A stretch of DNA of 63,645 nucleotides, filler included, from Sluysia triapertura (taxonomy: Eukaryota): the NCBI GenBank assembly GCA_046118255.1. It is 5 parts of 5 records of this genome, joined end to end, with 100 filler letters (N's around TTAATTAATTAA, not from the genome) between each part and the next. Parts side by side here need not be neighbours in the genome. Positions count along the whole stretch, not along the records: positions 1 to 16,532 come from JBJNIA010201707.1; 4 more parts are not named here. One strand, written 5' to 3'. Within the stretch, counting starts at the first letter, position 1, and each line of letters begins with the position of its first letter. The position numbers were made by a program, and so were the translations under genes. This document shows, one piece after another, positions 1 through 16,532 of the stretch. The notes below the pieces were generated by a model. The model worked only from the letters and a program-made list of their open reading frames with translations, searched no databases and was not told the origin of the DNA.

Positions 1-1
1 A

Positions 2-229
2 GATCTAAATTTAATAATTAAAGGAATAAAAATTAATGGGTATATTTGTCAATCAGGACATAAAAATATTGGGAATATTTATCAAAACGAACATCATAAT
101 CACGGCCATGTCATTCAAAACCATCAACAGAATTTAGGGAATGTTATTCAAAGAGATCAACAAAATTTAGGTGAAGTCATTCAAGATTTAAACCCTCGCC
201 TAGAGAAAGAACCAAAAATAGGTTTCTAA
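2..229 (+). CDS. 5'-truncated hypothetical protein with 11-aa Q/N/G repeats, ending DLNPRLEKEPKIGF
   Basis: Frame open from base 2 to TAA 227-229: ...QSGHKNIGNIY QNEHHNHGHVI QNHQQNLGNVI QRDQQNLGEVI QDLNPRLEKEPKIGF*. Confidence 0.7.
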   Translation, partial: DLNLIIKGIKINGYICQSGHKNIGNIYQNEHHNHGHVIQNHQQNLGNVIQRDQQNLGEVIQDLNPRLEKEPKIGF

Positions 230-244
230 AGGAGAATTTATGAA
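185..244 (+). repeat. 60-bp direct repeat, copy 1 (C-terminal tail + stop + RBS + next ATG)
   Basis: gatttaaaccctcgcctagagaaagaaccaaaaataggtttctaaaggagaatttatgaa is identical at 185-244 and 1873-1932. Confidence 0.97.
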
Positions 245-488
245 AATAAATAATATGCAAATAGAATGTTTAAAAAATGTTGAAAATCAACTAGCAGAAA
301 TATATAGCGATCTTATTAATTTAACAAATGAAATTAATAATGTTTATGTTCGTTCACAAGTAAATAGATTACTAAACAACATTAAAAGCACTAAGTGAGT
401 AGTTGAAAAAGTAGAATTAGATATTTCAGAAGAACAATTAATTCGAAATAGAAAAATTTTAGAAATAAAATTTGGTCATAAAAATTAG
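240..488 (+). CDS. Hypothetical helical protein (82 aa, code 4)
   Basis: AAGGAG RBS, ATG 240, one TGA=W, TAG 486-488. One extra A in the A5 run at 480-484 would give the C-terminus ...HKKLEF*. Confidence 0.7.
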
Positions 489-507
489 AATTCTAAAGGA
501 GAAATAT

Positions 508-849
508 ATGAAAACTAAAGAAATTATTAAAGTTGAAAATTTAGAACCAGTAAATGCTATAGATGATAATTATGAATTCAATGCTTATGAAGAATATAAA
601 GAAGCTCAAAATTTAATAAAAAACTATTTTCGCAAAACGAATCCGCACGAAAAAATCAGAGCGGGTGTTATTGCTAAAGAATATATTGTTGATAATTATC
701 CAATTATTAAACAACAAGCCCAAGACAAATGTTTAAATATGAAATGAATTGATAAATTCTACACATGTGAAATAGTTAAAAATACTTACGGAAAGCTATT
801 ATATGTGAAATTCAATGATCGAGAAATATTAAAAGAAATAGGAATATAG
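508..849 (+). CDS. Hypothetical protein (113 aa, code 4), paralog of the 16138 ORF
   Basis: AAGGAG RBS, ATG 508, reads through TGA 745-747 (KWIDKFY) to TAG 847-849; ends LKEIGI. Confidence 0.8.
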
Positions 850-876
850 GCGTAATTAAACCTAAACAAAACTAAA

Positions 877-1917
877 ATGGAAAATTTTAAATTATTAATT
901 TGAAAATATTTAGATGAATATAAAGGTGGCAAAAGATCTTTTATTCATTTTTACCAAGACATCATTCAACTAGAACCGGAAGGTTTTAGTGATTTTTGAA
1001 ATAACAATTTTAAAACAAAATATAATTCAACCAATTTTATTAGAAGATGCATTGGGGAATACGGTCGTAACAATAAAAACATCGTTTATTTCCGGAAAAC
1101 TGATAGCTACATGAAGATATTGCGCACTTACCAATATAAAAATGAAGTCGAATTTATTAATCAAACAAATGAGTCTTTACCTAATAAATATGATCACTCT
1201 GTAGAATATATGATTAAAACAAATTCCTTAAATATTGTGCAAGACCTAGAAAATTCTATTTATAGTTCTGTAACAGAAGGAAACCGAATAGATTCTATCG
1301 AAAAATTCGAACAAGCCCCTAATTCCTCTAGAGATAAAAAAGAAATTTTAAATATTTTAAAAGCTAGAGAATATTTAAATGAGAATAAGTCTAATGAAAA
1401 ATTAACTAAGGAAGATATTATTGTAATTTGAAGTTTAATATATCCTAAAGAATTGCATACATATAGAACTCAAAATGTTTTTATAACTGATGGATATAAG
1501 GCAATTGACCCATTATTGATTCAAAAAGAAATGAACAAATGAATCAAAGCATATAATATTAAACCTAAATCACCATCAGCGGCATTAATTAATTGTATGG
1601 TCCTGCATGCATGGTTTGAAAGCATTCACCCATTCCCTGATGGAAACGGTAGAACCGGAAGATTATTAAATGAATATTACTTTAAAATTCATAGATTAAC
1701 TAAAAATTGTACTTTAGATTACACGACATGAATTAATTTTCCTCCTTTATATAAACAAGAATTAAGAGCATTACAAGAAACAAAAAACATCGAAAATTAT
1801 ATAAAAACTAATATGAAATTTATTCATATAAATATTGAAAAATCTAAACAAATCAACAATACTAAATCAATTGATTTAAACCCTCGCCTAGAGAAAGAAC
1901 CAAAAATAGGTTTCTAA
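877..1917 (+). CDS. fic: Fic-domain protein (AMPylase-type), 346 aa
   Basis: Continuous code-4 ORF with canonical HPFPDGNGRTGR motif (~1627-1662) and an upstream SSVTEGN matching the (S/T)xxxE(G/N) inhibitory helix. Confidence 0.92.
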
Positions 1918-1932
1918 AGGAGAATTTATGAA
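1873..1932 (+). repeat. 60-bp direct repeat, copy 2
   Basis: Identical to 185-244; supplies the Fic C-terminus and the dnaG RBS/start. Confidence 0.97.
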
Positions 1933-3529
1933 TTTAAAATCAATCAATACTAAAGAATTCCTTAAAAAAATAGACATTGTTCAGGTAATAGGAAAGGAAC
2001 ATAACTTAATCAAAAAAGGTAGAAACTATATGTGTTTATGTCCATTCCATGCTGATAAGCACCCAAGTATGACCGTTTCACAATCTAAACAACTATATAA
2101 ATGTTTTTCATGCGGAGCTGGCGGCGATGCAATAAAATTTATTCAAGCTAGTAAAAAAATTTCATTCCCAGAAGCTATCAAATTACTATCTAAACAAAAC
2201 AACATAGATCTATCTAATATATCTTTATCAAAAAATATCAAAACATTCGATTTAAAATCTCAAATTTCATTTAAAGAATTAGAAAGATTTTATGAAATTA
2301 ATAATCAAGCTTTAAATTTCTATAAATATCAATTAAATAATAGCAAGCCTTGCCAAATTTATCTAAGTGAAAGACAAATAAATAATGATTCTATTAATAA
2401 ATATAAATTAGGTTATTCAGGTGAGTCAGAAAAATTTATCAATTATTTACTAGCTAAAGAATTTACAAACGAAGAAATTATTAAATATGGTTTAGGACAT
2501 TTAAATTCAGAAAATAAAATAGTTCCTAATTTTTACAATAGATTAATGTTTCCAATCTTTGATATTAACAATAATTGTGTAGGTTTTTCAGGAAGAGATA
2601 TAAATCAGAATCCACAAATTAAATATTTGAATTCGCCAGAGACACCTTATTACACAAAAGGAGATTATTTATTTAACTTAAACAATTCTAAAGATTTAAT
2701 TAAAAATAATAACCAAATCATAATTGTTGAGGGACCATTAGATTTAATATCTATTGGGCAAACAAAAGTTGAAAACACTGTTTGCTTATTCGGCACTTCG
2801 ATAACAAATCAACATATAAACCAAATTTCTAAATTAACAGAAAACATTGTTTTATCTTTAGACTCAGACAGTGCTGGTCAACTAGCTATAGAAAAATATC
2901 AAACTAAATTAAAAGATAAATTTAATCTCTATCGATTAAACTTAAACAATTCTAAAGATCCTGATGAATGAATAAAACAACATCCTAACAAATCAATATT
3001 AAACCAAATAGATTCTATTTCTGAACGAACGAATATTCAGATAATAGAAAATTCAAAAACAAATAAAGGAAATAATATGCAAATCAATCAATCAATGGAA
3101 GAATTTGAAAAACAAAAACAAGAATTTATTAATCAAATAGATTCTATTGCTAAACAAAACAACATCTCTTATGAGACAAATGATAAAGCTCAATTTGTTA
3201 AATTTACAAAAGATAACAAAACTTATCTAATTTGTACAAAATTTTATCCACGAAAAACAATCCCTAAAACAATTGAGGTCATTCCTCTTTCTAGCAGAAA
3301 TCAAATTGTTAATGAATTTAAGGTAAAATTAGGCCTAATTCAAGCAACTAAGAAAGAAGCAAATAAATCATACTCAAAAACAAAAACCAACGAAAAAACA
3401 ATAACTATTCCTATGGAGGAATACATAAAACTTTCTGAGTATAGATCTAAATATTTTAATTTAATAAAGTCTAAAGAATTCGAAAAAAAGCAAATTAATC
3501 TAGATAATTCACCAAAAATAGAATTCTAG
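1928..3529 (+). CDS. dnaG: DnaG-type DNA primase (CHC2 zinc finger + TOPRIM) with a 150-aa C-terminal extension, 533 aa
   Basis: CPFH..CFSC zinc-binding domain, KYLNSPET, VEGPLD, DSDSAG, KDPDEW. TGA 2969 is Trp and the frame continues without a stop into the 3077-3529 ORF. Confidence 0.92.
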
Positions 3530-3557
3530 ATATAATAAAAATTCAAACTTTAGTTTA

Positions 3558-3586
3558 AATAGTAGAAAAAAAATCTACTATTTTTT
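3558..3586 (+). terminator. Intrinsic terminator after dnaG
   Basis: aatagtaga-(A7)-tctactatt stem followed by a T run. Confidence 0.7.
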
Positions 3587-3784
3587 ATATATAAATTTAA
3601 TAATTACAGTTTTTAAAATATTTAAAATTTTAAGAAAACAACTAGTATAGTAAATATATATACTAATTAAAATTTAATTATATTTAACATTATTATTAAC
3701 ATTAATATAACATTAATATAACATTAGGAATTTTTAAATTCTTTTAAACCCTTTAATAGAACCATTTTTTTATATAATTTTTTT

Positions 3785-3869
3785 TTCAATAAAGGAAAAA
3801 CTATACTTCAATAAAGGAAAAACTATACTTCAATAAAGGAAAAACTATACTTCAATAAAGTAAAACTAT
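3785..3869. repeat. Replication origin iterons (3 perfect 22-bp units + 1 degenerate)
   Basis: ttcaataaaggaaaaactatac at 3785, 3807 and 3829, then ttcaataaagtaaaactat. An AT-rich region with 11-bp taacattaata repeats (~3697-3726) lies upstream, and rep lies immediately downstream. Confidence 0.9.
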
Positions 3870-3933
3870 TAATAAATAAGTAAAAATATATATAAAAATA
3901 CTTTTTAATAAAAATTTAGTATATAATTAAAAC

Positions 3934-4707
3934 ATGGTTAATAATATATATATGTCTAAAAAACTAGAAATGATTTTAAAAGATGAAAAAGTGATTATTA
4001 GTAATAATTTTGCTCAATCACATTTATCACACAATCTAAATAAAATACAGTGAAATATATTTTTCTATGGAATATTAAAAATAAATAAATGCAAAGATAA
4101 TATATGTAAATTTTATGTTCAAGATTTTTGTAATGATAGTGGTTTATTAATAAATAATTTTTATAATTATGCCGAATCTAATTTTAAATTTATTAGAACA
4201 TTAGCCATTACTACTAAAAATCCTAAATATAAAATATATTCAGAAACTAATATTTTTTCAAAAATAAATTATGAAGATGGAGAAATTTCTTTTGTAATAA
4301 ATCCTGATCTCCTAGATGAATTTAAAAATTTATCTAAAAATTGTACATACCAAGATTTTAAAACTTTTATAAGTTTTAATAGTAGTTATTCAAAAAGAAT
4401 ATATATTTATTTTCGAAGTTTATATATTCCTAATAAGGAAATTTCTAAAATTTTTACAATAGAAGAATTTCAATCAATTTTTGATGTTCAAAAAACATAT
4501 AAATCTACTAGTGATATTAAAAAAACAATAATAGATAATTCCTTAAATGATATAAATGAAAATTGTGAAGATTTTTTAATGTCTTATAGTGATATTAAAA
4601 AACCTAACAGTAAAAAAATAATAGGATTTAAATTTAAAGTTATACCGAGGGTTAAAGGTTTATTTGTGCAAGAACAACTAGAAAAAGGAGAAAGTGAATC
4701 CTTATAA
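3934..4707 (+). CDS. rep: Plasmid replication initiator, Rep_3/RepB family (~257 aa; alternative start 3952)
   Basis: Code-4 ORF absent from the ORF track. ISNNFAQS..LNKIQWNIF, SFVINPDL..F.NL, FNSSYSKRIY, IEEFQSIF..Y..IKK.II..L.DIN and KIIGFKF resemble Rep_3 winged-helix initiators; adjacent to iterons. Confidence 0.85.
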
Positions 4708-4717
4708 GGAGAAAGAT

Positions 4718-6589
4718 ATGAAAAAGTGATTAACTAGTTTAGGAATGATAGGAATTTTAAGTTTTGGAACAGGAACAATTACTCAAGCCACTTACAATAT
4801 TGTTTCACAAAATTTAAAGACAATAAATTTTACTTTTGAAAATGTCAATGTAAAAACTACTGCTCAATTTACCGGTATATATCAAGATAAATTTGGGTAT
4901 TTATGGGCTAAAGCTACACCTGATGTACTTAAAAAACCTCTAGTTGGAGGTCTATGAAAATCTACCGATGGAGGAAAAACTTTTACCCAAATAACTAACG
5001 GTATTGGAAGCGATTGAACTATTCTATTTATATTTCAAGACAAAAATGGTGTATATTGAACCGGCGGTTTACTAAAAGGTCTATGAAAATCTACCGATGG
5101 AGTAAATTTTACCCAAATAACTAGTAGCGGAATCGGAACCGATTGAAATATAAATGGTGTATTTCAAGACAAATCAGGAATCATATGAGTTGGTGTGTGT
5201 GGTGGTAATGTTCATCCCTATGAGCTATTAAAATCTACTGATGGAGGGAATACTTTTACCCCAGTGACCGTATCTAATGCATCATATAAAGACGTAACTA
5301 TTTATTTTCAAGATAAAAACGGATATATGTGACTTACTGCAAATGATGGGTTATATAAAACATCTGATGGAATAAATTTTATAAGAATTCCTGACACTCC
5401 CACAGTATCATTTAAATATGTCATTGAGCTTGCCCAAGATAAAGCTGGAAATATATGAGCTGCTATAGATATGAGAGGTCTATGAAAATCTACCGATGGA
5501 GTAAATTTTACAAATACCTGAGTAAATAATAGTTCCATATCGTGCATTCTTCAAGACAAAATAGGCATATATTGAATATCATATGGTGGATTATCTAAAT
5601 CTACCGATGGAGTAAATTTTACAGATATAACTTTTAACCAAGAAATCGGAGTGAATTCAATTTTTCAAGATGATATTGGAAATCTTTGAGTTGCCACCAC
5701 CGGCGGAATATTTAAATCTACTGATGAAAATTTTAATGGTGTAGGATATAAAACCCAAGGTAAAGAAGTGGTTGCCTTTTATCAAGGACAACCTTATAAG
5801 TTTATTAATGCCGATACATTGTTTTACGTTAATGATAGTGCAGTTGACAAAGTAACTATCAATGGGAAAGATTATATTAATACTGGTGAATTTAATTATA
5901 CGTTAACAGCAAAAGAAAATGGAGGAATATTTAATATTGTTGTATCTAAAAAAGACAAAACATCACAAAACTATTATTTTTATATTAAACAAAGTGTTAA
6001 CCCCTCAACTAACCAATTCTCCACAGATAATGCTTATAAATTAACGCAATATCTCGGACAATATAATTGAGGAAAAGAAACAATTAATTTCTTATTCGTT
6101 CAAGGAGATAATGGTTCACCGGATCTAAAATATATTTTAAACGACCCAATTTTAGATTTAACAACTTCTACTTATCAAAGTTGTGATATGGTGAACGGAA
6201 AAATTGTTCTTAAAGGACAAGCAACCAAGTTTCCCCAAAATAACGGGGTCATTTCCGGTTATGGGTTATATTTAATGACTATTCAAGACAAGCTAGGAAA
6301 TAAAATTCAATACTTATTACAAGTAGGTAAAACTACTGAAAAACCTATCGTTCAAAAAGCCGAGGATAAAAAGGCTAGTGGAACTTCGCTAATCCCCGGG
6401 AAACCAATTCCTCCAGCACCAAATAATTCTACAAATGGTTTAAATAATGGAACAATTGCTTTAATAGCTATGGCTTCTGTTGCAATTTTTTTACTAGCAT
6501 GCTCATTAACATATCGTTTTGGAATTGCCCGTAGAAAATATCTCAAAAAATTAAAACAACACAAGGAGGCAGGTGGTAAAGATGATTAG
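4718..6589 (+). CDS. Surface-anchored 7-bladed beta-propeller adhesin-like protein (623 aa)
   Basis: N-terminal MKKWLTSLGMIGILSFG signal; seven QD(K/D)xGxxW...(W/Y/F)KSTDG repeats (BNR/Asp-box and Reg_prop-like); Pro-rich linker; C-terminal TM helix and basic tail. Merges track ORFs 4745, 5768 and 6188. Confidence 0.85.
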
Positions 6590-6845
6590 TCAAATTATAT
6601 TTAATTCTGTAGAAGCACAAGTTTTTCAATGATTTATGTCAAATGTTATGGTTTGAATTTATGTAATCTTAGCAATTGGTGGTTTATGTGGTGTCGGTTG
6701 ACAAATATATCATTTAATTACTAAAGTTGATGAAAGACCAAAATACGTAAAACATTTAGTTTTTACAATAATTATTTTAGCAGTTGCATTAAGTTTATAT
6801 TCAATAATTATTTATGCAATAGTCCCAGCATACATTCAAGGTTAA
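6582..6845 (+). CDS. Small 2-TM pilin/VirB2-like protein (87 aa)
   Basis: GGAGG RBS, overlaps the adhesin stop, two hydrophobic helices, located before the VirB6- and VirB4-like genes. Confidence 0.6.
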
Positions 6846-6849
6846 ATTT

Positions 6850-7869
6850 ATGTCAGGAATCATATTAGACATTTTTAATTATATATTTTGACCTATAGCG
6901 CTAGTTATACTAGGTTTAATATATGGTTTGCAATGAGTGTTTAATTGATTGAGTGGTAGTTGATTATTTAACGGAATTTTAGGGGATTCAGTAATGAATA
7001 CTTTATGAATTGTGTTAATTCTAATAGGAACATGTTTCCTATTATTTGTAATTGCAATATTAATCTTTAAAGCTGTTAATAATCACAATATGACCATTCA
7101 TTTACAAAAAGGTTCTTTTCGCGCTTTTTGCTTATTTTTCTTTTGATTGATTTTACCAATTCTTTTTTTTAATAGCTTAATGGTCTTTGGTGGAATAATC
7201 GATTTAATATTTAAATCAGTTAATATCCAACAATTAAGTTTTGCTAATTTAGTACATCTAATGGGTTATACATCTAATGGTGCTTACAATAGTCACGCTA
7301 GTGAAAATTGAGATACTCCTCCTGTATGAGGGGAATATAATATCTTTGTTACAATAGTTGCCGGAGTTTGTGTAATAAAAATTCTTTTTGAATATTGCAT
7401 AATGTTAATTAAACGAATTTTTGATCTAATGATGCTATGATTTTCTTTTCCTATGGTATCAGCTCCTGTAGTTGCTGAAGAAAACGTTTCTAAATTACTA
7501 GCTTGAAAAGATGCCTTTGTTTCGACCCTTTGAACGGCCATCATTTGCATTATAAGTTTTCTAGTGTTTAGTTCTATAACACCATTAATTTTAAATAAAA
7601 TGCGTGAATCTTTATATGGCATTGCTTTCGGAGGTTGAATTTGATTTGCCTTTGTAATTATTTGGGTTATTGGTGGTGGTAAAGGATCAATCGCTGGAAT
7701 TCAAATGATTGTTCAAATTATGGGCACAAGCAATAATCCATACCATAATATCAATCAAGAAATGGGCAAAGCCGCCAGAATCGGTAAAAAACCATTGAGC
7801 TGAGGCAAAAAAGCAATCATGAATTCAAACCCCGTAACATCCGTTGCAAATAAGGTGATGAAATTATAA
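6850..7869 (+). CDS. Polytopic membrane protein, VirB6/TrbL-like (339 aa)
   Basis: Code-4 ORF with ~7 hydrophobic segments and an IKRIFDLMMLWFSFPMV motif typical of VirB6-like proteins; position in the tra operon. Confidence 0.7.
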
Positions 7870-7872
7870 GAT

Positions 7873-10251
7873 ATGACAAACTATGATAAACAAAAAGTAA
7901 TTATTCCTAAAAGTAGTAAAAAAGTAGGAATCTATTGATTTAAAAACCTTAACAGTTTTGAGCTGTTATGGCTAGTCGGTTTAGTAATTATTGATGTTTT
8001 TATTATCGGCTTCTCATCTGGGATTGCATTCAGAATCATTATCACTATTGTTTTATTCTTAATTGGTTTAATTTCAGTTTTGAATTTTAACGGTAAAAAA
8101 ATTTACCAGATGTTTTATATATACCTAAAATGACTCCATGTTATTAAGCATGATGTGATAGGTTATAAAGAAGTTAAAGATAATAATTATCAAATTAATA
8201 ATCAATATTTTAGTTGTTTTTCCATTAATGCTGAGTCTATTGACTTTCTATCAGAAGAAGATGTTCATAAAGTTTTAGCTAACTTTTGAAATTTAATCAA
8301 ATCTATCCCAAATGGGTGTTTTATCAAAATCCCCCAAACATATAATTTTGATAGTTATCATGAGATGATTAAAAATTTCTCTAAAAACTTTCTTTTAAAA
8401 GAAGAAAAAATAATCAATAACTTTACAAATTCTCAAAATGTTAGTGAAATTTACTTTGTCGTTTATGATTCTAAGCTAGAAAAATTAAACACTTATAAAA
8501 ACAAGTTAATTTCTTTTTTCAATAATAACTTTATTAAGTATTCTCAAACATCATTTGACAAAATAAGAAATTATTTTGGTTCTAATTGAACTTTTGAAAA
8601 TAAAAACTTTATTAAGAAAAATAAAGACAAAGGTTTTATTTGACAAGTTCGCGATATGGCCATTGAGAATAATTCATTCTTTTTAAGGGATTTGTTTAAT
8701 GTTAAAAATTGTTTTACTATTTTAAATTTCAAAGAAATTGAACAACAAACAGCTAAAAAACAATTAGATAATATCATTAATAAAATAAACTATAATCAAA
8801 CAAAATATTCCAAATCATCACAAATGATGGAATCAAACATGATCTTTGATGCAATAAATTTACAATTAAGTTCGATTGTTGATAACACCGATAGTTTTAA
8901 ATTAATCGATTTATATGTAGGATCTATCTCTTCAAATAAATCTGATTTAGTTGCCGCCGATGCGGCTATAAGAAATAGTTGTAAAATTGCCAACTTCTCT
9001 TTAGACACATTTAAAAATGAACAACACCTAATGCTTAAAAAAGCCTTATCATTCCAAAATACTTTAAACCGTAATTCATTAAATATGACAGGTGAAAGTT
9101 TAGCATGTGGTTACTTTTTATCTAAAAACATTTTAAAAGATGAAAAAGGTATGCTAGTTGGCGCTGATAACCAAGGAAACCCCGTATTTTTAAATATCTT
9201 TACAATTAATAATAAACGTAAACATCATAACTGTGTGTTGTTTGGAACGCCGGGGTCTGGCAAAACAACCCTCCTAAAAAAAATGTTAGTTTGAAATAAT
9301 TTAAACAAACATCGTATTTTTTTAATCGATGTCGAAGATGAATATTCCGAATGATTTAAAGAACAACAAGGGAAAATCATTGATTTAGCTGGTGGCAAAA
9401 CAACCATAAATCCTTTAGAAATTTTCCTAGATGAAGGAACTAGTTATAGAGCTAACATATCAACGCAATTGATTATGTTATCTAACTTTTTATTAATGTT
9501 GTATCCAGCAATCGAACAAGCCCCCAAAGAATACATTTTAAAAGTCATTGAAAAATTATATAAAAAACTACTAAAAAATGAAAATTCTAAAAATATAAAA
9601 TGATTCACATTTAGTGATGTGATCAAAGAAGCTAAGAAAGATAAAGAACAATATGAAATTGTTTCTTTCTACTTAGAACCATTAATTCAACGATATGGTG
9701 AATATTGAAACAAACCAACTAATATAACTATAAATTCTAAAGATATGTTGATTTGCGCTAGATTACAAAATAAAGACAATCAAGAAATCGATATGGATTC
9801 TAAAGTATTATCAATTCAAATTTATTTAATAACTAAGTATTTAAATAAAATCATCTACTCTGCTAGAGAAACAAACCAACGTTGCCTAATAATTTTAGAC
9901 GAAGCCCATAAGTTAGTAAGCGACGATAATGAATTCATCCTAACCTATTTATCAAACCTTTCTAAACGTGTAAGAAAATATAATACCGCTCTAATTTTAG
10001 CAACACAAAACATTTCTGATTTTACATCTAGTAAAACCAATGAAAAATATTTCTCAAACATTTTTAAATGTATGCAGTATTTCTTTTATGGTGGCATGCA
10101 TGCCCAAGATATATCTTCTCTAGATTCTTTATTAAAAGATTCTGGAGGGTTAACTGATTCCCAAAAATCTTTTTTAACTATTGCTGAAAAAGGCCAGTTC
10201 ATTTTACAAACAGATAATACTAATTTCATTAGCTTAAAGGTGTTGATATAA
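7873..10251 (+). CDS. virB4: VirB4/TraE conjugation ATPase with N-terminal PrgI/VirB3-like TM domain (792 aa)
   Basis: Continuous in code 4. N-terminal VIIPK.. plus 2 TM; HNCVLFGTPGSGKT Walker A; IILDEAH Walker B; KRVRKYN..LATQ. Confidence 0.92.
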
Positions 10252-10253
10252 CT

Positions 10254-11837
10254 ATGAAAACAAAAATAATTAATTTTTTACTAGATAACAAGTGAAAAAT
10301 ATTTTGAAATATATTAGGAATCATTCTTTTATTCATAATCTTAGGCTTTATATTTAATGCCTTTAGATGAATATCATTAGACCATTTAAAGGGTTCGTTC
10401 ATAAAAGAGATTTACGCTCCCCTATTTGGTTGAGGTTTCTTAGCTGCTATTGTAATAGTTATTGGTGGTAACATCTACTTTTATTTTCATCCATCTAGAA
10501 ATAGATCTATAAAAGCTAAACCTCTTTTGAAAGTAAACATCTTAGAACACGATAAAGACGGTTATGTTGTTACAAGTAAAAAATCTAATGGCAAAATCAC
10601 TTCTGAAATCATTCAAGATACACATGCTTTAATTGTTGGTGGTACACGTAGTGGCAAAACGCAAGGAATTGCTCTTCCATCGATATTTATGAATATTCAT
10701 TCATCTAACCCACCAAGTTTGGTTATAACTGATCCTAAAGGGGAAATATACCAACAAATGAAAGGTTATTTAGCAAAAGAAAATTATAATATTCAATGTT
10801 TGAATTTAACAAATGATTCTACAGACCATGACATTTATTGAAATCCCTTAGAAAAGTTTTATTTAGAATTTAAAAAAGATAAGTCTAATGAAAATTTAAT
10901 GGACATTAGAACTGAAATCGAAGAATATTTAGAAAAAATATTAATCAAAGCAGAAAATGAAAAAGCATCTTTTTTTACCATTTCTGCTAATACATTAATT
11001 AACGATGTAATTATTGAATTCATGAAATTAAAAACAACGACCGTTAAAGATTTTAATATGTCAGCAATTTATAATATTTTTAAAAACGTTACAAATTTTA
11101 CTCAATTTGTTTATTCTCTGCCAGTAAATGAACAATATAAATTCAAAGAATATACTCAAGCCACAGGCCAATTTGACGGTATAAGAGGAACTGCCGCTCA
11201 AAGCTTGAAGTTTTTTTCTAAAGCTAGAATAGAAAAAATAACTTCTAAAAACACTTTAGAATTATCAAAATTTAGAGCCGATAAAAATGTTATCTTTATT
11301 ATCTTTAAAGAAGATGATGAAATTTCCCATTTTTTAGTTTCCGCTTTCATTGCCGAATTATATAAAGTTTTCCGTGAAGACAAAACTCATAGAAAAATAT
11401 ATTTGTTTTTAGATGAATTCGGTAATTTACCAATAATTAATAACTTTGAAAAAGCCTTATCATTGGGTGCTGGTTATGGAATTTACTTTTGTTTTGTATT
11501 GCAAACAATTTCCCAACTAAAACTTTACGCAAGTTTTAACTCTGGAAAAGAACAAATCATTTTAGATAATGTAAATTGTCTATTTTTACTAGATATCAAA
11601 AATAATAAAGATGCTGATTATTTTTCCAAACGTTTAAGAACCAAAAATATTACGGTTACATCATCAACAAGATCTGCTAAAGGAGATATTTCCACACACG
11701 AATCTTCTCGTGAAGTTGCAATTATCTCTAGCAACGATTTATTAAGTTTAGAAAAATGAGAATGTGTTGTTCAAACACCTAAATCATATCCAAGAAAAAT
11801 TAAACTTCTACCTTTCTATCAGTTTGATTTAAAATAA
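10254..11837 (+). CDS. virD4: VirD4/TraG type IV coupling protein (527 aa)
   Basis: 2 N-terminal TM; HALIVGGTRSGKTQ; TDPKGE; WNPL; LDEFGNL; LQTISQL. Confidence 0.93.
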
Positions 11838-11940
11838 TTTTTTAAAATTAAATAGTTAATAGTATAATTATTGTGTGTTCTTAAATATCACCAAACTTAT
11901 ATAAATATAAAAATATACATTTTGGAATAGTATCATTTTT

Positions 11941-11968
11941 AAAAAAACCCTTTTTTAAGGGTTTTTTT
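11941..11968. terminator. Bidirectional intrinsic terminator
   Basis: aaaaaaaccctt-tttt-aagggttttttt between convergent genes. Confidence 0.8.
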
Positions 11969-12053
11969 ATATTTATAGGTAAACATACTATGGTTTATAA
12001 GGAAGTGTCAAAAATAGTAAATAAAACCTATTTAAAAGGAAAAATTATTATCT

Positions 12054-12470
12054 TTAGTAATAATTTTTCCCCATTAGAAAGTTTTTGCCTTTCGAATTCA
12101 AATAATTTTCTTTGATAATTATTTGTTTTAAATAAATTAATCTATTGTTATGAACATTTAATTTTTTATATTCAATAGCCATGAAGATAAAACTAGTTAT
12201 AGCTAATACAAATAGTATAGCTAAAACTATTAAAGGAATATACAATGTGTTTAATGGATTATATGCTGTTATAAACATGTTTTGGTTAAACAGTACAGTA
12301 ACTAAAACTAAATACAAAACATTTGCAATTACAAATCTCTCAAAAATAAACATTCAAACATATTTAAATTTATATTTTTTAAATGGTTTAAGAATTCATT
12401 TAATTAGAAAAACTAAAGGAATAATAAGTAAAATTTTTACTACTATTCAAAATAAATAACCAGTACTCAT
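12054..12470 (-). CDS. Small multi-TM membrane protein (138 aa, code 4)
   Basis: AGGAG RBS. MSTGYLFWIVVKILLIIPLVFLIKW... extends track ORF 12054-12353 through TGAs; three hydrophobic segments. Confidence 0.7.
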
Positions 12471-12472
12471 AT

Positions 12473-12925
12473 CTACTCCTCCCTTCTTTTTTTCAAAAGC
12501 ATTTCTTTTTTCATTCGACGAATTTTAAATGCTCGTTCGATAAAGTTCATTTGAATTAAGTCGTTGAATTCATCTTTTAGTTTTTGATTTTCATCACCTA
12601 ATTTTTCATAAGTTAACAAATTTTGCTCTAGTAATTTTTTACTAGCTTCAATATTCAATCGTGTTTCACGTTCATCTTTTACCGCCTTTTCGGCTTTTTG
12701 AAGGTCAGCTTTAATTTGCTCTAATTCCTCTTTTAGAGATATAACTTGTGTATTAGTTGTAATAATTCTTTTTATAGGATTGGCCTCAATGTCCTTTTTA
12801 AAGATTAAATATTCTTTTTCCGTCATGGCCCCAACGATATTTAATTTTTTCTTTCTATCAACAACAGCCTTATCCGTTAAATGAAATTCCTCTGCTAAAT
12901 TTCTAATTGAATAATTTTTTTTCAT
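12473..12925 (-). CDS. N-terminal HTH + coiled-coil protein (candidate plasmid partition/regulatory protein)
   Basis: GAGGAG RBS; SIRNLAEEFHLTDKAV HTH followed by a long heptad coiled coil, an architecture like staphylococcal pSK1 Par. Confidence 0.6.
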   Translation of the reverse strand: MKKNYSIRNLAEEFHLTDKAVVDRKKKLNIVGAMTEKEYLIFKKDIEANPIKRIITTNTQVISLKEELEQIKADLQKAEKAVKDERETRLNIEASKKLLEQNLLTYEKLGDENQKLKDEFNDLIQMNFIERAFKIRRMKKEMLLKKRREE

Positions 12926-13121
12926 AATGTACTCCTCACAAATATATTATACTACATATGTTAATTAAGCATAATAGTATAACATCAAAGAAACCATTAT
13001 AAAATAAAGATTATTTTTATATATAGTCCTAAAAATGATATAGTAATACACCCACTATAGCACTATAGTAAAGTATATTTACAACCATATTTTTTTCTAC
13101 TAGAAATGGCGCCTAGCTAAT

Positions 13122-13149
13122 AAAAAATCTCAGAGTTTTTCTCTGAGAT
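13122..13149 (-). terminator. Terminator after the ssb-like gene
   Basis: atctcagag-ttttt-ctctgagat stem with a T run on the minus strand. Confidence 0.75.
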
Positions 13150-13175
13150 CTAAATTTAATGAAAATATAAATTAG

Positions 13176-13436
13176 TTAGATAAATGTTTCAAATCGCTCT
13201 GCAAACATATAATATTTATTATCTAATTCAAATATATAACCTTGAATTCCTAATAAACATCCTATATGTAATTCTTTAAAACCTTCAAGTTCTTTCTCTA
13301 GTAAAACTTTAATATCAGAATATTCTTTGAATTTAGCGATTTGATATCTAACTGTTAATAATTTATATTTTTCATTATTTAAATTTACGTAATCTATATC
13401 AAGTAAATTCCCAATTACGATGCAATCATTTAGCAT
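13176..13436 (-). CDS. ssb: Short SSB-like OB-fold protein (86 aa, no acidic tail)
   Basis: MLNxxxxIGNL start, GCLLGIQGYI and AERFETF patterns typical of SSB; AAGGAG RBS. Confidence 0.65.
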   Translation of the reverse strand: MLNDCIVIGNLLDIDYVNLNNEKYKLLTVRYQIAKFKEYSDIKVLLEKELEGFKELHIGCLLGIQGYIFELDNKYYMFAERFETFI

Positions 13437-13558
13437 ATTATTCTCCTTATAAACCTAATTTTTAGGTCCCTTTGAAATAAAATTGCCAGAGCAATTAAAA
13501 TAAAGGTAACTAAAAATTTATAAGAGAATAATCTAATGAATAGAGTAATTGGGAATTT
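13405..13558. promoter_or_regulatory. Long imperfect hairpin A overlapping the ssb RBS/start
   Basis: aaattcccaattac/gtaattgggaattt (14 bp perfect), attattctc.ttataaa/tttataagagaataat, apical aattgc-caga-gcaatt. Confidence 0.75.
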
Positions 13559-13666
13559 TTAGATATTTAATTATTAGCGCGCCATTTACTATTTAGCGAA
13601 AGCTAAATTCAGCAGCCTTTGTTTTTAATAATTTATTAACCTTTTTTCTCAGTGTTTAAAAAAATA

Positions 13667-13689
13667 AACCTGAGAAAAATCTCAGGGTT
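13667..13689 (-). terminator. Terminator after the 13703-14107 gene
   Basis: cctgaga-aaaa-tctcagg stem with a T-rich run on the minus strand. Confidence 0.65.
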
Positions 13690-13702
13690 AATTTATAAAT
13701 TA

Positions 13703-14107
13703 TTATGATTTAATAAGTGATTTTAAAGTTTCTTGAATTGCTAGTGCCTCTTGGTACTCTTCGCCAGTTAAATTTAAAACTGAAAAAGACAACAATTTCT
13801 CAAAAATAGTAATTTCTTTACCTTCAAAGATGCCTTCTTTTTTGATGATTTCAATTATTGCAATATTAACTTCGGCTATTGTTTTATGAATTGAATTTAA
13901 ATCAGCACCTAAGGCATCTTTTAATTTGTTAATGAAATCTACACCTTGATTAGGAGAAAGTTGTTCTTTTTCAACTAAGTTTTGAATTTTTTCGAAAGTA
14001 GCACGAGCACGATTAAGCAAATCATTTCTAAAATTATTCTTTTTAGAAATTTCAAATTCGAAACCTTTAATCACTTTCATTAAATCTTTATTTTCATCTA
14101 GTAACAT
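13703..14107 (-). CDS. Hypothetical helical protein (134 aa)
   Basis: AAGGA RBS, clean ORF, own terminator, upstream hairpin module shared with ssb. Confidence 0.7.
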   Translation of the reverse strand: MLLDENKDLMKVIKGFEFEISKKNNFRNDLLNRARATFEKIQNLVEKEQLSPNQGVDFINKLKDALGADLNSIHKTIAEVNIAIIEIIKKEGIFEGKEITIFEKLLSFSVLNLTGEEYQEALAIQETLKSLIKS

Positions 14108-14220
14108 ATTAATCCTTTTGACCTAATTTTTTAGGTCTCGCAGAGATAAAATTGCCAGAGCAATTAAAATAAGAGACCCTAAAAAATATTCAAGATTAAT
14201 ATGGCTACTGAAAATTAAAA
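14088..14220. promoter_or_regulatory. Long imperfect hairpin B overlapping the start of the 14107 gene
   Basis: catattaatc/gattaatatg, ttttttaggtctc/gagaccctaaaaaa, and the same 27-nt apical core as hairpin A. Confidence 0.75.
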
Positions 14221-14464
14221 TAAAAACAACTGCTGAAAAAGATTATAATAAAGATGTTTACTTTAAATTAATTTGGAGTAAATATTCTAGTAACATCAAA
14301 ATCACTTTTGATCAAAATTTAAGTAGCTGAAAAGCTACTTTTTTTGTATATCAAAACCACAAAAATAACCTAATTTGTTTATATATATTTATATATAAAT
14401 ATATATAACATTTTTTTCTTATCTCGTTTCCCTTTTTACTAGTATAATTAGAGAGTGAATCAAA

Positions 14465-16129
14465 ATGAAATATTTTCAATCTCAAATTTCCGCCCCTGAA
14501 ATCCCTTTCAAGTCTAATATTGAAGAGCAGCTTCAATCTCAGCTTGAAAATTTGGGCGAACGCGCCGCGAAAAAACGCGGCGAAAAAATTCCTGACGGAA
14601 TTTTTTTAAAGTTTAATAATCTTATAGAAAAAATTTTTGCGGTGTGTACTACTGAGATTCCGCCAGTGGCGCAATTGGGTTTGTTTACCTCAGGCAATGA
14701 AAATGAACTTAAAAATAAAATAGAAACTAAATTTAAAACTATCTTAAAACAAAATAATATTAAAAAATCTAATTACAAAATTAAAACAAAATTTAATAAA
14801 AAAGAAAACAAATATGAAACAATAGCTTACTGAAATAAAAATGCTAGTAACAAATCTAAAACAAATAGAATTCATATTAAATCAGAATTCAAAACTAGAA
14901 ATACTTTTTATAAATCAGAAAACGTTTCTAAATTACTAGCTAGTAAAGAAATTTTAAATAATCCACTATTAAAAATCACTAAAGAAAAAATATCTCTAGA
15001 AGATAATGTCTTAATAAGAGCAAAATTTGTAGACATAAATACAAAAAACTATAAATTTTACACATCATCTACTAAAGACGATAGCTATCTAGATTACATT
15101 TTAAGAAAACAAGCAATCTCTAAAGAAAATAATAATATAATTGAAATTCCAAACAGCACTGAAAAAGAAAATTATCTAGATTATATGGTCAATCGAACAA
15201 AAACTGAGGGCTGCTTTGATAAACATGGAAACTATTATGATTCCCAAAAATTGAAAAGCGAAAGCATTCAACTAGAAAAAAATTCTAAAAATGGTGTTTT
15301 TGTTTGAGATATAGTTATAAATTTTAAACAAGACTTTTCTAATGAATATGATCTATATGAACCAGATAAATATTTAAGAAAAATTATCGCTGAAGAAGTA
15401 ACTAACATTTATAAGAATTCAAATATAGATCCTAAAAATCTCCAAATGAAATTTGTCTTTCACACTAATACAGAAAATCCCCACTTTCATTGTTTCGTTA
15501 ATGAAATTAGACACTTAAATAAAAAAGCTAAACTACAAAATGATATGGGGGATATATTTATTCATGCCAAACAAAATATTATTTCAAGAATTATTAGTTG
15601 TGAAGAAAGAAATATTGAACTTAAAAATAAACCAAAAATAAACTATTATTATTCGGTAGCTTATAAAAAAACTCATAACCATGAAGTTGCATTAAAATAC
15701 TCAGAATTAAAAATTTATGAATTAAATTTAGATAAAGAATTAAATTTAAATTCTAAAAAAATAGAAATTTTAGGAAGTTATGAACAATTAAAAGCAGAAT
15801 ATTTAAAAACTTTAAAAAACAAAATCATCTTAGCTAAAGACGATGATATGCAAATTTGTTTTACAAAATTAAAACCTCAACAAAAACAAACTCTATCTCC
15901 TTTAGAAAGAAAACAAAAACAAATAAATGATTCCCTATATTTAGAGCTGATAAAAATGAGATCACTAAATGAAATGAAGGCCAACATTAAATTAACAAAA
16001 GAAATAATCAAACATAGTTATGATATTCAACACAACATCGATATCAATAAAACTTTATCTACTAAAAACCAACTATCAAAAACATCTAAAACTCATTCAA
16101 AAGAGAATGATTTAGATATTTCTTATTAG
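14465..16129 (+). CDS. mobL: MobL-family relaxase (up to 554 aa; true start uncertain)
   Basis: Continuous in code 4. YLDYILR, YLDYMVNR..EGCFD, VWDIVINF and FHTNTENPHFH (HxNTxNxHxH) are MOBL motifs. Confidence 0.85.
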
Positions 16130-16137
16130 GAGTAATT

Positions 16138-16532
16138 ATGGATGACGAATTAAAAAATTACAACAAGGCATGTGAATTTATATCTAAATATTTTTTAGAA
16201 AAAAATTCTCAACAAAAACTATCTCTAGCTATCAAAGCTATAAAATTCATAAGATCTAACTACGATGAAATTATGGATGAAGTTAGTTATCAAGAAAAAA
16301 ATTACAGTACTAAGTGAATTGATAAATTCTATAATGCAAAAATAGCTACAAATCAACAAACAAAACAAAAATATTTATCTTTTGCTGTTAAGTCTTTAAG
16401 TGGAACGCACATTTCACCTGAACAAAAAATAGCTAGAATAGATAAATTTATTAACCAAATAGATTCTATTGCTAAACAAAACAACATCTCTTATGAGACA
16501 AATGATAAAGCTCAATTTGTTAAATTTACAAA
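16138..16532 (+). CDS. 3'-truncated chimeric hypothetical protein
   Basis: AGGAG RBS. N-part is homologous to 508-849 (..YF..N..K....NY..I....KWIDKFY); last 77 bp are identical to 3134-3210 in the DnaG extension. Confidence 0.8.

What the first reader, a model, noticed from the sequence alone, without database searches (positions are those of the whole stretch)
13405..14220. Twin long hairpins with a conserved apex and compensated stems over the starts of ssb and its neighbour
Both minus-strand genes are preceded by a module with an identical 27-nt core, ataaaattgccagagcaattaaaataa (13477-13503; 14146-14172), at the apex of a 130-150-nt hairpin. The lower stems differ between copies, yet each pairs with its own gene's RBS, start codon region and first codons, so structure rather than sequence is conserved. 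Each also has a competing small palindrome, accta-a(t)n-taggt. Established: leading-region genes such as ssb are expressed early from single-stranded hairpin promoters (Frpo/ssi), and Bacillus pLS20-family establishment genes share upstream regulatory repeats. Inference: either ssDNA promoters (requiring the + strand to be transferred) or 5'-UTR switches silencing establishment genes in the donor. I know of no such element described in Mollicutes.
Basis: partly seen in the sequence, partly recalled or inferred. Interest (0 to 1): 0.8.

Follow-up and report, generated by a model that had tools for sequence, protein, structure and literature searches.

The report
Twin hairpin leaders, Mollicute conjugative plasmid
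Two small neighbouring genes next to the transfer origin of an unsampled Mollicute conjugative plasmid each carry the same 27-base motif at the tip of a ~180-base hairpin that buries the gene's own ribosome-binding site and start codon, most likely a silencing leader for genes that act on arrival in a new cell, though no experiment or relative yet shows how it works.

Summary
The contig is a code-4 (Mollicute) conjugative plasmid inside a 619-Mb eukaryote assembly. It carries Rep_3, DnaG, VirB4, a T4CP and a MobL-like relaxase. Two tandem minus-strand cassettes, each made of module, small ORF and terminator, share a 73-nt repeat with a 27-nt identical core. The arms are gene-specific: swapping arms between copies drops the folding energy to -22.1 and -30.5 kcal/mol, against -44.8 and -37.8 for the native pairs. 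SD and AUG are about 81% paired when the whole leader is present. They are 50-70% free if the RNA starts in or after the core.

No relatives exist in any collection searched, there is no Rfam match, and no RNA data are available, so n = 2. The "ssb" label is not supported by Pfam, NCBIfam, PHROGs or PDB.

Best reading (0.4): a promoter/operator-like core embedded in a fold-back leader that blocks translation of any transcript carrying both arms. This resembles IS200/IS10 and pLS20 EGeRS1. A Frpo-type ssDNA promoter is not excluded, but three things count against it: the pLS20 analogy for which strand is transferred, the wobble asymmetry, and the lack of consensus hexamers in the stem. It is a new variant of a known kind, of moderate interest.

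The parts
13390..13573 (-). Hairpin A (184 nt). The 5' arm lies upstream. The 3' arm carries the SD, the ATG and the first 15 codons of the 86-aa gene.
   Evidence: RNA z -6.33, DNA z -8.35. Includes a 14-bp perfect outer helix, 13545-13558 / 13405-13418.
13477..13503 (-). Core A: 27 nt identical to core B. Holds a 6-bp apex mini-hairpin (AATTGC-N4-GCAATT) flanked by unpaired T-rich runs on the sense strand. -10-like hexamers occur on both strands: TATTTT on the sense strand, TAAAAT twice on the + strand.
13453..13467 (-). Conserved small palindrome A (ACCTAA-N3-TTAGGT) between the core and the SD. Its 5' half pairs alternatively with the conserved upstream TTTTTAG (13510-13516).
13443..13448 (-). 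Shine-Dalgarno sequence of gene A (AAGGAG), paired with 13524-13532 in the long hairpin.
13176..13436 (-). Gene A, 86 aa, an orphan.
13125..13151 (-). Intrinsic terminator after gene A.
14068..14245 (-). Hairpin B (178 nt). The 3' arm carries the SD, the ATG and the first 13 codons of the 134-aa gene.
   Evidence: RNA z -4.88, DNA z -5.41.
14146..14172 (-). Core B, identical to core A.
14120..14137 (-). Conserved small palindrome B (GACCTAA-N4-TTAGGTC). It competes with pairing to 14178-14187.
14113..14117 (-). Shine-Dalgarno sequence of gene B (AAGGA), paired with 14193-14202 in the long hairpin.
13703..14107 (-). Gene B, 134 aa, an all-helical orphan.
13669..13686 (-). Intrinsic terminator after gene B. 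It separates cassette B from module A.
14321..14340 (.). Hairpin upstream of module B. It has a strong T-tail on the + strand only. It may insulate the module, terminate a possible + strand transcript arising in module B, or form part of oriT.

Best explanation
Each module is the expression-control leader of a self-contained cassette (leader, small ORF, terminator) in the region flanking oriT of a MobL-type Mollicute conjugative plasmid. The 27-nt core plus the second palindrome is the shared, sequence-specific part. It most likely holds a weak -10/-35-type promoter (TTGAAT or TTATAA, 16 nt, TATTTT on the sense strand) overlapped by palindromic binding sites for a common regulator. The gene-specific arms form a fold-back. 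Any RNA that carries both arms, whether read-through from upstream or started at the -10-like boxes at the hairpin base, buries SD, AUG and the first 13-15 codons in an ~85-bp stem and is not translated. RNA started at the core lacks the 5' arm, forms only the small ACCTAA/TTAGGT hairpin, and exposes the SD. The genes would therefore stay silent in an established plasmid and be made only when the core promoter fires, for example before a plasmid-encoded repressor has accumulated in a new recipient. Shown: the repeat, the hairpins, the copy-specific arms, the computed SD/AUG occlusion and the cassette layout. Inferred: the position of the promoter, the existence of a regulator, and the timing of expression.
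For: - The identical 27-nt core and the conserved second palindrome sit at a fixed distance from the start codon, 40 and 38 nt.
- The hairpins are far beyond shuffled controls on both copies.
- The arms are copy-specific: swapped-arm chimeras fall to -22.1 and -30.5 kcal/mol, against -44.8 and -37.8 for the native pairs.
- The variable segments between fully conserved blocks still pair within each copy: CCUUU/AAAGG in A, GGUCUC/GAGACC in B.
- The mean unpaired probability of SD..AUG is 0.18-0.19 with the full leader and 0.5-0.7 when the RNA starts in or after the core.
- Among 16 gene starts on the contig, only the three minus-strand first genes have SD/AUG occluded by partners 61-96 nt upstream. 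In both modules the partners lie at the same distance, -96 to -83.
- A third, unrelated fold-back covers the start of the next minus-strand gene, with z -3.7.
- -35-like hexamers sit at homologous alignment columns 16 nt upstream of TATTTT (read from sequence).
- Each cassette has its own terminator.
- Precedents: the IS200 tnpA 5'UTR hairpin sequesters the SD behind an upstream terminator (PMC4513863). pLS20 EGeRS1 is a structured region just upstream of the RBS that lacks a constitutive promoter and blocks expression from upstream promoters (PMC8708921). p576 establishment promoters share an operator (PMC6294495).
Against: - There are only two copies and no homologues, so there is no phylogenetic covariation.
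- No transcript data exist, so no TSS is known.
- The consensus promoter scan did not call the proposed sense-strand promoter. The better -10 hexamers (TAAAAT, twice) are on the opposite strand.
- -10-like boxes also lie at the 5' base of both hairpins: TATAAT at 14243-14248 and AATAAT near 13567-13572. That would place the whole hairpin in the native mRNA.
- Stems reaching 40-46 nt into the CDS are longer than SD sequestration requires and would suit a DNA-level hairpin.
- No repressor has been identified.
- The arms could have grown by template switching at the central palindrome without any selection.
Confidence: 0.4

Rival explanations
1. A 5'-UTR switch with the promoter upstream. The native mRNA starts at the hairpin base and is made translationally silent. 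A trans-acting factor recognises the conserved apex and opens or cleaves the stem. That factor could be an RNA-binding protein, RNase III, or an antisense RNA made from the TAAAAT boxes on the opposite strand of the core.
For: - -10-like boxes sit right at the 5' base of both extended hairpins: TATAAT at 14243-14248 and AATAAT near 13567-13572.
- SD/AUG are about 81% paired in such RNAs.
- A 27-nt identical apex would let one factor act on both genes.
- Two TAAAAT hexamers lie on the + strand in the core. In copy A there is a TTGAAA-18-TAAAAT site scoring 10/12.
- A strong + strand terminator lies at 14321-14340, about 150 nt beyond core B, with no + strand gene to serve.
- Sense-strand wobble bias, 5 G.U against 1 A.C.
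- The IS200 art200/tnpA precedent: loop-loop antisense pairing on an SD-sequestering hairpin (PMC4513863).
Against: - The upstream -10-like boxes are not in a conserved block.
- Copy B lacks a -35 for the + strand promoter, and copy A lacks a good + strand terminator.
- No RNA data exist.
- No candidate RNA-binding protein has been identified.
Confidence: 0.2
2. A Frpo/ssi-type single-stranded DNA promoter. The hairpin forms on the incoming + strand, which is the template of both genes, and host RNA polymerase transcribes the genes before the complementary strand is made.
For: - Long imperfect hairpins lie upstream of small ORFs beside oriT and a relaxase gene.
- The stems are much longer than SD occlusion needs.
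- The core places a TAAAAT hexamer of the + strand in an unpaired internal loop that resembles an open -10 region. In copy B the 5' arm of the + strand offers TTGACC.
- Frpo elements precede ssb and anti-defence genes in many plasmids (PMC11541004).
Against: - The + strand would have to be transferred. [quoted passage not shown] The gene layout here is the same.
- TTGACC to TAAAAT spacing is 23 nt, and copy A lacks the -35 (read).
- The wobble asymmetry favours the other strand.
- There is no Rfam or sequence relation to known elements.
- The conserved small palindrome has no role in this model.
Confidence: 0.15
3. The arms have no function. A promoter/operator core with a perfect central palindrome has provoked template-switch ('quasi-palindrome') repair that copied each gene's 5' end in inverted form upstream. 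The hairpins would then be a mutational by-product.
For: - Each 5' arm is an inverted, decayed copy of the gene's own start (84-86% identity, with indels), including a mirrored pseudo-SD, ATG and codons such as V-I-G-N.
- A further direct 11-nt copy of gene B's start lies at 14286-14296.
- The plasmid is rich in short duplicated junctions.
Against: - The same outcome occurs in both copies, with nearly equal spans (184 and 178 nt) and the same register relative to AUG.
- A third gene with an unrelated apex also has a fold-back over SD/AUG.
- Pairing is kept despite indels.
- Variable segments between conserved blocks still pair.
Confidence: 0.12
4. A priming signal (ssi/sso-like) on the transferred sense strand. 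The hairpin recruits RNA polymerase or the plasmid's own DnaG-type primase to start complementary-strand synthesis in the recipient.
For: - The plasmid encodes a CHC2-zinc-finger/Toprim primase.
- Long hairpins lie in the probable leading region.
- The sense strand folds slightly better.
- The apex loop on the sense strand reads TCTG, which contains the CTG initiation triplet known for E. coli DnaG (own knowledge).
- Frpo was first described as a primer-RNA promoter (PMC11541004).
Against: - A priming signal has no need to sit in fixed register with SD/AUG or to use each gene's own start as an arm.
- Synthesis would run away from the gene that the module precedes.
- No ssoA-type motifs and no Rfam hit.
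Confidence: 0.08

Closest known systems
[quoted passage not shown]
   Same: An upstream terminator is followed by an inverted repeat whose 3' arm holds the SD and start codon. Translation is blocked by an intramolecular stem. The upper stem-loop may be a contact point for an antisense RNA, and -10-like boxes lie on the opposite strand.
   Different: The stems here are about 85 bp rather than about 30 bp, and they run 13-15 codons into the CDS. The context is a plasmid cassette, not a transposase. There are two copies with an identical apex and different arms. No antisense RNA has been shown.
EGeRS1 of pLS20-family plasmids (PMC8708921)
   Same: A repeated, highly structured region lies immediately upstream of the RBS of putative establishment operons in a MobL / CD1115-T4CP conjugation system. 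It blocks expression from upstream promoters in an orientation-dependent way. The genes probably enter the recipient as the non-template strand. The mechanism is unknown.
   Different: EGeRS1 is 400-600 bp, GC-rich relative to its plasmid, and multi-branched. Here the conserved part is about 75 nt and forms one hairpin of about 180 nt, with GC equal to the plasmid's (0.23-0.25 against 0.257). No sequence similarity was tested, because no reference sequence was at hand.
EGeRS2 / Reg576-controlled promoters of p576 (PMC6294495)
   Same: Several establishment genes each carry the same short promoter-plus-operator block and short 5' hairpins. The zygotic-induction logic matches.
   Different: The TTATCCC heptamer is absent from the contig. 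No RHH repressor gene was recognised. p576 has no long fold-back over the start codon.
Frpo/ssi single-stranded DNA promoters of F, ColIb-P9 and relatives (PMC11541004)
   Same: A long imperfect hairpin lies upstream of small leading-region ORFs, with promoter-like hexamers near or in the hairpin.
   Different: No properly spaced -35/-10 pair lies in the paired stem. The hairpin overlaps the gene's own SD, AUG and codons. The likely transferred strand is the wrong one. There is no sequence relation.

Membership tests
Frpo/ssi ssDNA promoter | A long imperfect hairpin in the non-coding region upstream of a leading-region ORF | tested here: met
   Unlike Frpo, however, the hairpins extend into the ORF.
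Frpo/ssi ssDNA promoter | -35 and -10 (and UP) consensus elements with their complements in the stem, 16-18 nt apart | tested here: not met
   On the sense strand only TTGAAT or TTATAA, 16 nt, TATTTT, with the -10 in an unpaired apex region. On the + strand arm, TTGACC (copy B only) lies 23 nt from TAAAAT.
Frpo/ssi ssDNA promoter | The transferred strand is the template of the downstream genes | not testable with these tools
   The nick site is unknown. The pLS20 analogy and the wobble bias point the other way.
Frpo/ssi ssDNA promoter | Sequence similarity to known Frpo/ssi elements | tested here: inconclusive
   No Rfam hit. No Frpo reference sequence was available for direct comparison.
SD-sequestering fold-back leader (IS200/IS10 type) | An upstream segment complementary to SD/AUG forms a stable stem | tested here: met
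   P(unpaired) is 0.18-0.19.
SD-sequestering fold-back leader (IS200/IS10 type) | The native or external transcripts actually contain both arms, and translation is repressed | not testable with these tools
   No RNA run holds the sequence.
EGeRS1 (pLS20 family) | A 400-600-bp conserved region with GC well above the plasmid mean and multiple inverted repeats | tested here: not met
   About 75 nt conserved. Hairpins of 178-184 nt. GC 0.23-0.25 against 0.257 for the contig.
EGeRS1 (pLS20 family) | Lies immediately upstream of the RBS of several operons near a MobL conjugation system | tested here: met
   Two cassettes. Weak MobL/MobP2 relaxase hits and a CD1115-type T4CP.
EGeRS2 / Reg576 regulon | A dual TTATCCC operator overlapping a sigma-A promoter, with an RHH repressor among the regulated genes | tested here: not met
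   The heptamer is absent from the contig. Neither product matches any DNA-binding family.
SSB (PF00436), for the 86-aa gene | A significant match to the SSB OB-fold profile | tested here: not met
   No hit even at E of 10 in Pfam. None in NCBIfam, PHROGs or PDB. Only an ESM-atlas neighbourhood hint. The AF2 model has pLDDT 52.
Intrinsic terminator / attenuator | A G+C-rich stem followed by a U-tract | tested here: not met
   The terminator scan finds the gene-end terminators but nothing inside the modules.

The most novel reading that the evidence does not exclude
The hairpins act in the single-stranded DNA that enters the recipient. They work as a strand-state sensor that starts transcription, or primase/RNAP priming, only while the plasmid is single-stranded. 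This would be the first ssDNA-dependent establishment signal in a Mollicute and in a MobL-type (pLS20-like) system, and a 180-nt minimal model for the unexplained EGeRS1 regions.
Probability: 0.2. Interest if true: 0.8.

Novelty: new variant of a known kind. Interest (0 to 1): 0.55.

Why it matters
How Gram-positive-type conjugative plasmids switch establishment genes on briefly in a new host is largely unknown. The structured EGeRS1 regions of pLS20 have no mechanism, and ssDNA promoters are documented mainly in proteobacterial plasmids. This module is very compact and has separable parts: a shared core, a competing small hairpin, and gene-specific arms. All of these could be tested by simple stem and compensatory mutations. 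It also comes from a conjugative plasmid lineage of insect- or eukaryote-associated Mollicutes that public data have essentially not sampled. If the module works at the RNA level, it is a clean example of insulating costly genes from read-through. If it works at the DNA level, it extends ssDNA-dependent signalling to Mollicutes.

Tried and rejected
- **Search for relatives of the module.**
  - The exact 22-mer gave nothing in viral contigs.
  - In genome contigs it gave two hits inside unrelated coding sequences of a Rickettsiales and an Ignavibacteriaceae MAG, both chance.
  - The looser core pattern in metagenome and viral contigs gave 204 matches. All are chance: their flanks do not align with the module, and most sit in coding sequences where the motif would read as L-I-A-x-A-I-L.
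  - BLAST and pattern search of the whole 619-Mb assembly found only the two copies. A third hit with 3 mismatches is AT-rich host DNA.
  - PLSDB blastn found nothing.
- **Search through proteins.**
  - Neither small protein has a homologue by word search or by tblastn to plasmids.
  - The relaxase piece has only 4 weak MobL hits among 1.84 billion representatives. The three loci fetched for two of them (L008-L010) lack the module.
- **GTDB genome search.** Mollicute genomes could not be reached, because the window's genome has no relatives in that collection.
- **RNA and earlier notes.** No Rfam family matched.
- **Structure prediction.** Both models were too poor to use, pLDDT 52, so no fold search was run.
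- **Ideas rejected.**
  - Integron attC-like sites: the conserved part is at the apex, not the base.
  - A transcription attenuator: no U-tract.
  - A MITE with target duplication: the 11-nt direct repeat does not abut the hairpin ends.
  - Enrichment of the ACCTAATTT half-site across the contig: 17 matches observed against 15 expected.
- **Not done.** No covariance model was built. With two sequences and no reachable Mollicute collection, it would have added nothing beyond the BLAST and pattern searches.

Full report
**What the contig is.** The piece (1-16532, GC 25.7%) reads properly only in genetic code 4. It is contig C201707 of a 619-Mb, 263,945-contig eukaryote assembly, so it belongs to a Mollicute associated with that organism.

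It encodes:
- a DnaG-type primase (1928-3529);
- a Rep_3 initiator (3934-4707);
- a VirB4 of the mycoplasma-ICE type (7873-10251);
- a CD1115-type coupling protein (10254-11837);
- on the + strand at 14465-16129, a protein with weak but consistent MobL/MobP2/MobP3 relaxase matches, including the H-x-H motif.

It is therefore a conjugative plasmid with a pLS20-like (MobL) DNA-processing module. Four genes run the other way, between the coupling-protein gene and the relaxase gene: 12054-12470, 12473-12925, 13176-13436 and 13703-14107. The last two carry the finding.

**The observation.**
- The 27-nt core occurs exactly twice in the window and in the whole assembly, with none expected by chance.
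- It lies in a 73-nt direct repeat of 78% identity.
- Both copies fold into long hairpins with the core at the tip, on either strand and with RNA or DNA parameters: z -6.3 and -4.9; z -8.4 and -5.4.
- With wider flanks the hairpins span 13390-13573 and 14068-14245, that is 184 and 178 nt. They reach 46 and 39 nt into the coding sequences.
- Each 5' arm is a decayed inverted copy of its own gene's SD, ATG and first codons: 61/71 and 58/69 matched positions, with several indels.
- Exchanging arms between copies drops the energy from -44.8 and -37.8 to -22.1 and -30.5 kcal/mol.
- The short segments that differ between the fully conserved blocks also pair within each copy: CCUUU/AAAGG in A and GGUCUC/GAGACC in B. 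They do so in slightly different register.
- The small palindromes ACCTAA-N3/4-TTAGGT are conserved. They share their 5' half with the long stem, so the two structures are mutually exclusive.
- A Logan unitig of the only run that holds the sequence covers 13132-14336 without a difference. The imperfect arms rule out a snap-back artefact.

The hairpins are simply larger than stated.

**What is not confirmed.** The 86-aa product is not demonstrably an SSB. It has no match in Pfam (even at E = 10), NCBIfam, PHROGs or PDB sequences. It has no homologue by word search. The single-sequence AF2 model has pLDDT 52. The only hint is an ESM-atlas neighbourhood in which one cluster has 13% SSB-annotated members. 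The 134-aa product is an all-helical orphan.

**Relatives.** None were found.
- Pattern scans of viral, genome and metagenome collections returned only chance matches inside unrelated coding sequences.
- PLSDB has nothing similar.
- The coupling protein is only about 28% identical to Bacillus plasmid proteins.
- The relaxase piece finds four weak MobL hits among 1.84 billion representative proteins. The AT-rich loci fetched for two of them (L008-L010) lack the module.
- Rfam has no match, and no RNA-seq run holds the sequence.

Every functional statement therefore rests on two copies and on analogy.

**Anatomy that bears on mechanism.**
- Each gene is a closed cassette: module, ORF, intrinsic terminator (13125-13151 and 13669-13686).
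- The core is 40 and 38 nt from the ATG.
- In the full-length leader, SD..AUG are on average 18-19% unpaired. If the RNA begins within or just after the core, they are 50-70% unpaired and the small palindrome forms a 5' hairpin instead.
- Among all 16 gene starts of the contig, only the three minus-strand first genes have SD/AUG occluded by partners far upstream. In both modules the partners sit at -96 to -83.
- The third gene (start 12925) has an unrelated 95-nt fold-back, z -3.7. Occluding the start site therefore looks like a theme of this block of genes.
- On the sense strand, -35-like hexamers (TTATAA, TTGAAT) lie at homologous columns 16 nt upstream of TATTTT at the 5' edge of the core.
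- On the opposite strand the core holds two TAAAAT hexamers.
- -10-like boxes also sit at the 5' base of each extended hairpin.
- In DNA this AT-rich, none of these can be called a promoter without data.

**Which strand is single-stranded?**
- The most structured stretch of the contig is a cluster of three hairpins at 14491-14606. It includes the only GC-rich inverted repeat and lies in the 5' part of the relaxase ORF. The DNA fold gives z -6.7 on the minus strand and -5.3 on the + strand. This is the likely oriT.
[quoted passage not shown] The divergent establishment genes therefore enter as the non-template strand (PMC8708921).
- The same layout here would make the minus strand, which is the sense strand of both cassettes, the transferred one. 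The two cassettes would then be the first genes to enter.
- Wobble mismatches in the arms also favour folding of the sense strand, 5 G.U against 1 A.C. That count is too small to be significant.
- Both points count against a Frpo-type promoter, which needs the template strand to be transferred (PMC11541004). Neither excludes it.

**Interpretation.**
- **Most likely (0.4):** a shared promoter/operator-like core embedded in a gene-specific fold-back. The fold-back makes any transcript carrying both arms untranslatable. This gives tight silencing in the established plasmid and expression only from the core promoter. It combines the logic of the IS200/IS10 leaders (PMC4513863) with that of the pLS20-family establishment regulons (PMC6294495, PMC8708921).
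- **Close variant (0.2):** the promoter sits upstream, and a trans-acting factor or an antisense RNA acts on the conserved apex.
- **ssDNA promoter:** 0.15.
- **Arms as a non-adaptive product of template switching at the central palindrome:** 0.12.
- **Priming signal on the incoming strand:** 0.08.

**Verdict.** The feature is real, statistically robust and specific to two cassettes beside oriT. It has no described counterpart in Mollicutes and no detectable relatives. It fits known kinds of regulation rather than demanding a new one, and the mechanism cannot be settled by computation. I rate it a new variant of a known kind, interest 0.55.

Noticed in passing
window 14491-14606 (and 14659-14673): A cluster of three adjacent hairpins inside the 5' part of the relaxase ORF, including the GC-only repeat CGCCGCG-A6-CGCGGCG. 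It is the most structured stretch of the contig (DNA z -6.7 on the minus strand). It is a likely oriT and resembles the GC-rich stretch plus inverted repeat at the pLS20 nick site.
   Followed up: partly
window 12908-13012: A third fold-back hairpin with an unrelated apex pairs the SD and AUG of the 150-aa HTH-like gene (12473-12925) with an upstream segment that contains TATAAT (z -3.7).
   Followed up: partly
window 185-244 = 1873-1932; 16445-16532 ~ 3123-3210: Exact or near-exact internal duplications: 60 nt at 100% identity covering a gene end plus an RBS junction, and 88 nt at 98.9%. The contig ends inside the second repeat, so the assembly probably broke there and the plasmid may be larger or circularise at that point.
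   Followed up: partly
window 13104-13118 and 13575-13589: A GC-rich motif (AAATGGCGC...CTAAT) in inverted orientation flanks cassette A. Next to the second copy lies a small hairpin, TTTAGC-GAAA-GCTAAA (13592-13607). Its function is unknown; it could be a recombination or protein-binding site.
   Followed up: no
window 14286-14296: An 11-nt direct copy of gene B's first codons (ATGTTACTAGA on the minus strand) lies 189 nt upstream of the real start. It heads a 12-codon mini-ORF.
   Followed up: partly
window 14321-14340: A hairpin with a strong T-tail on the + strand only, although no + strand gene lies upstream of it. It could end a small + strand RNA starting in module B or at the palindromic ATTATAAT box (14243-14250).
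   Followed up: no
L008 960-1032, 12872-12944, 18684-18756: A distantly related AT-rich MobL element from an ENA MAG has its own three-copy intergenic module: a TATAAT box followed by a perfect 17-bp hairpin with a T-tail. This is another repeated regulatory unit in such elements.
   Followed up: no
L219 1174-1330 and L220 400-557 (other contigs of the same assembly): Two further AT-rich code-4 contigs encode 122-124-aa paralogues (about 30% identity) of the 150-aa HTH-like protein. Each is preceded by two copies of the 14-bp palindrome AAGGTATATACCTT, a probable operator. The symbiont therefore carries other mobile elements.
   Followed up: partly
window 14465-15030: The relaxase-domain matches begin only at about residue 195 of the 554-aa code-4 ORF. 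The N-terminal ~190 residues overlap the oriT-like hairpins and have no family match.
   Followed up: no
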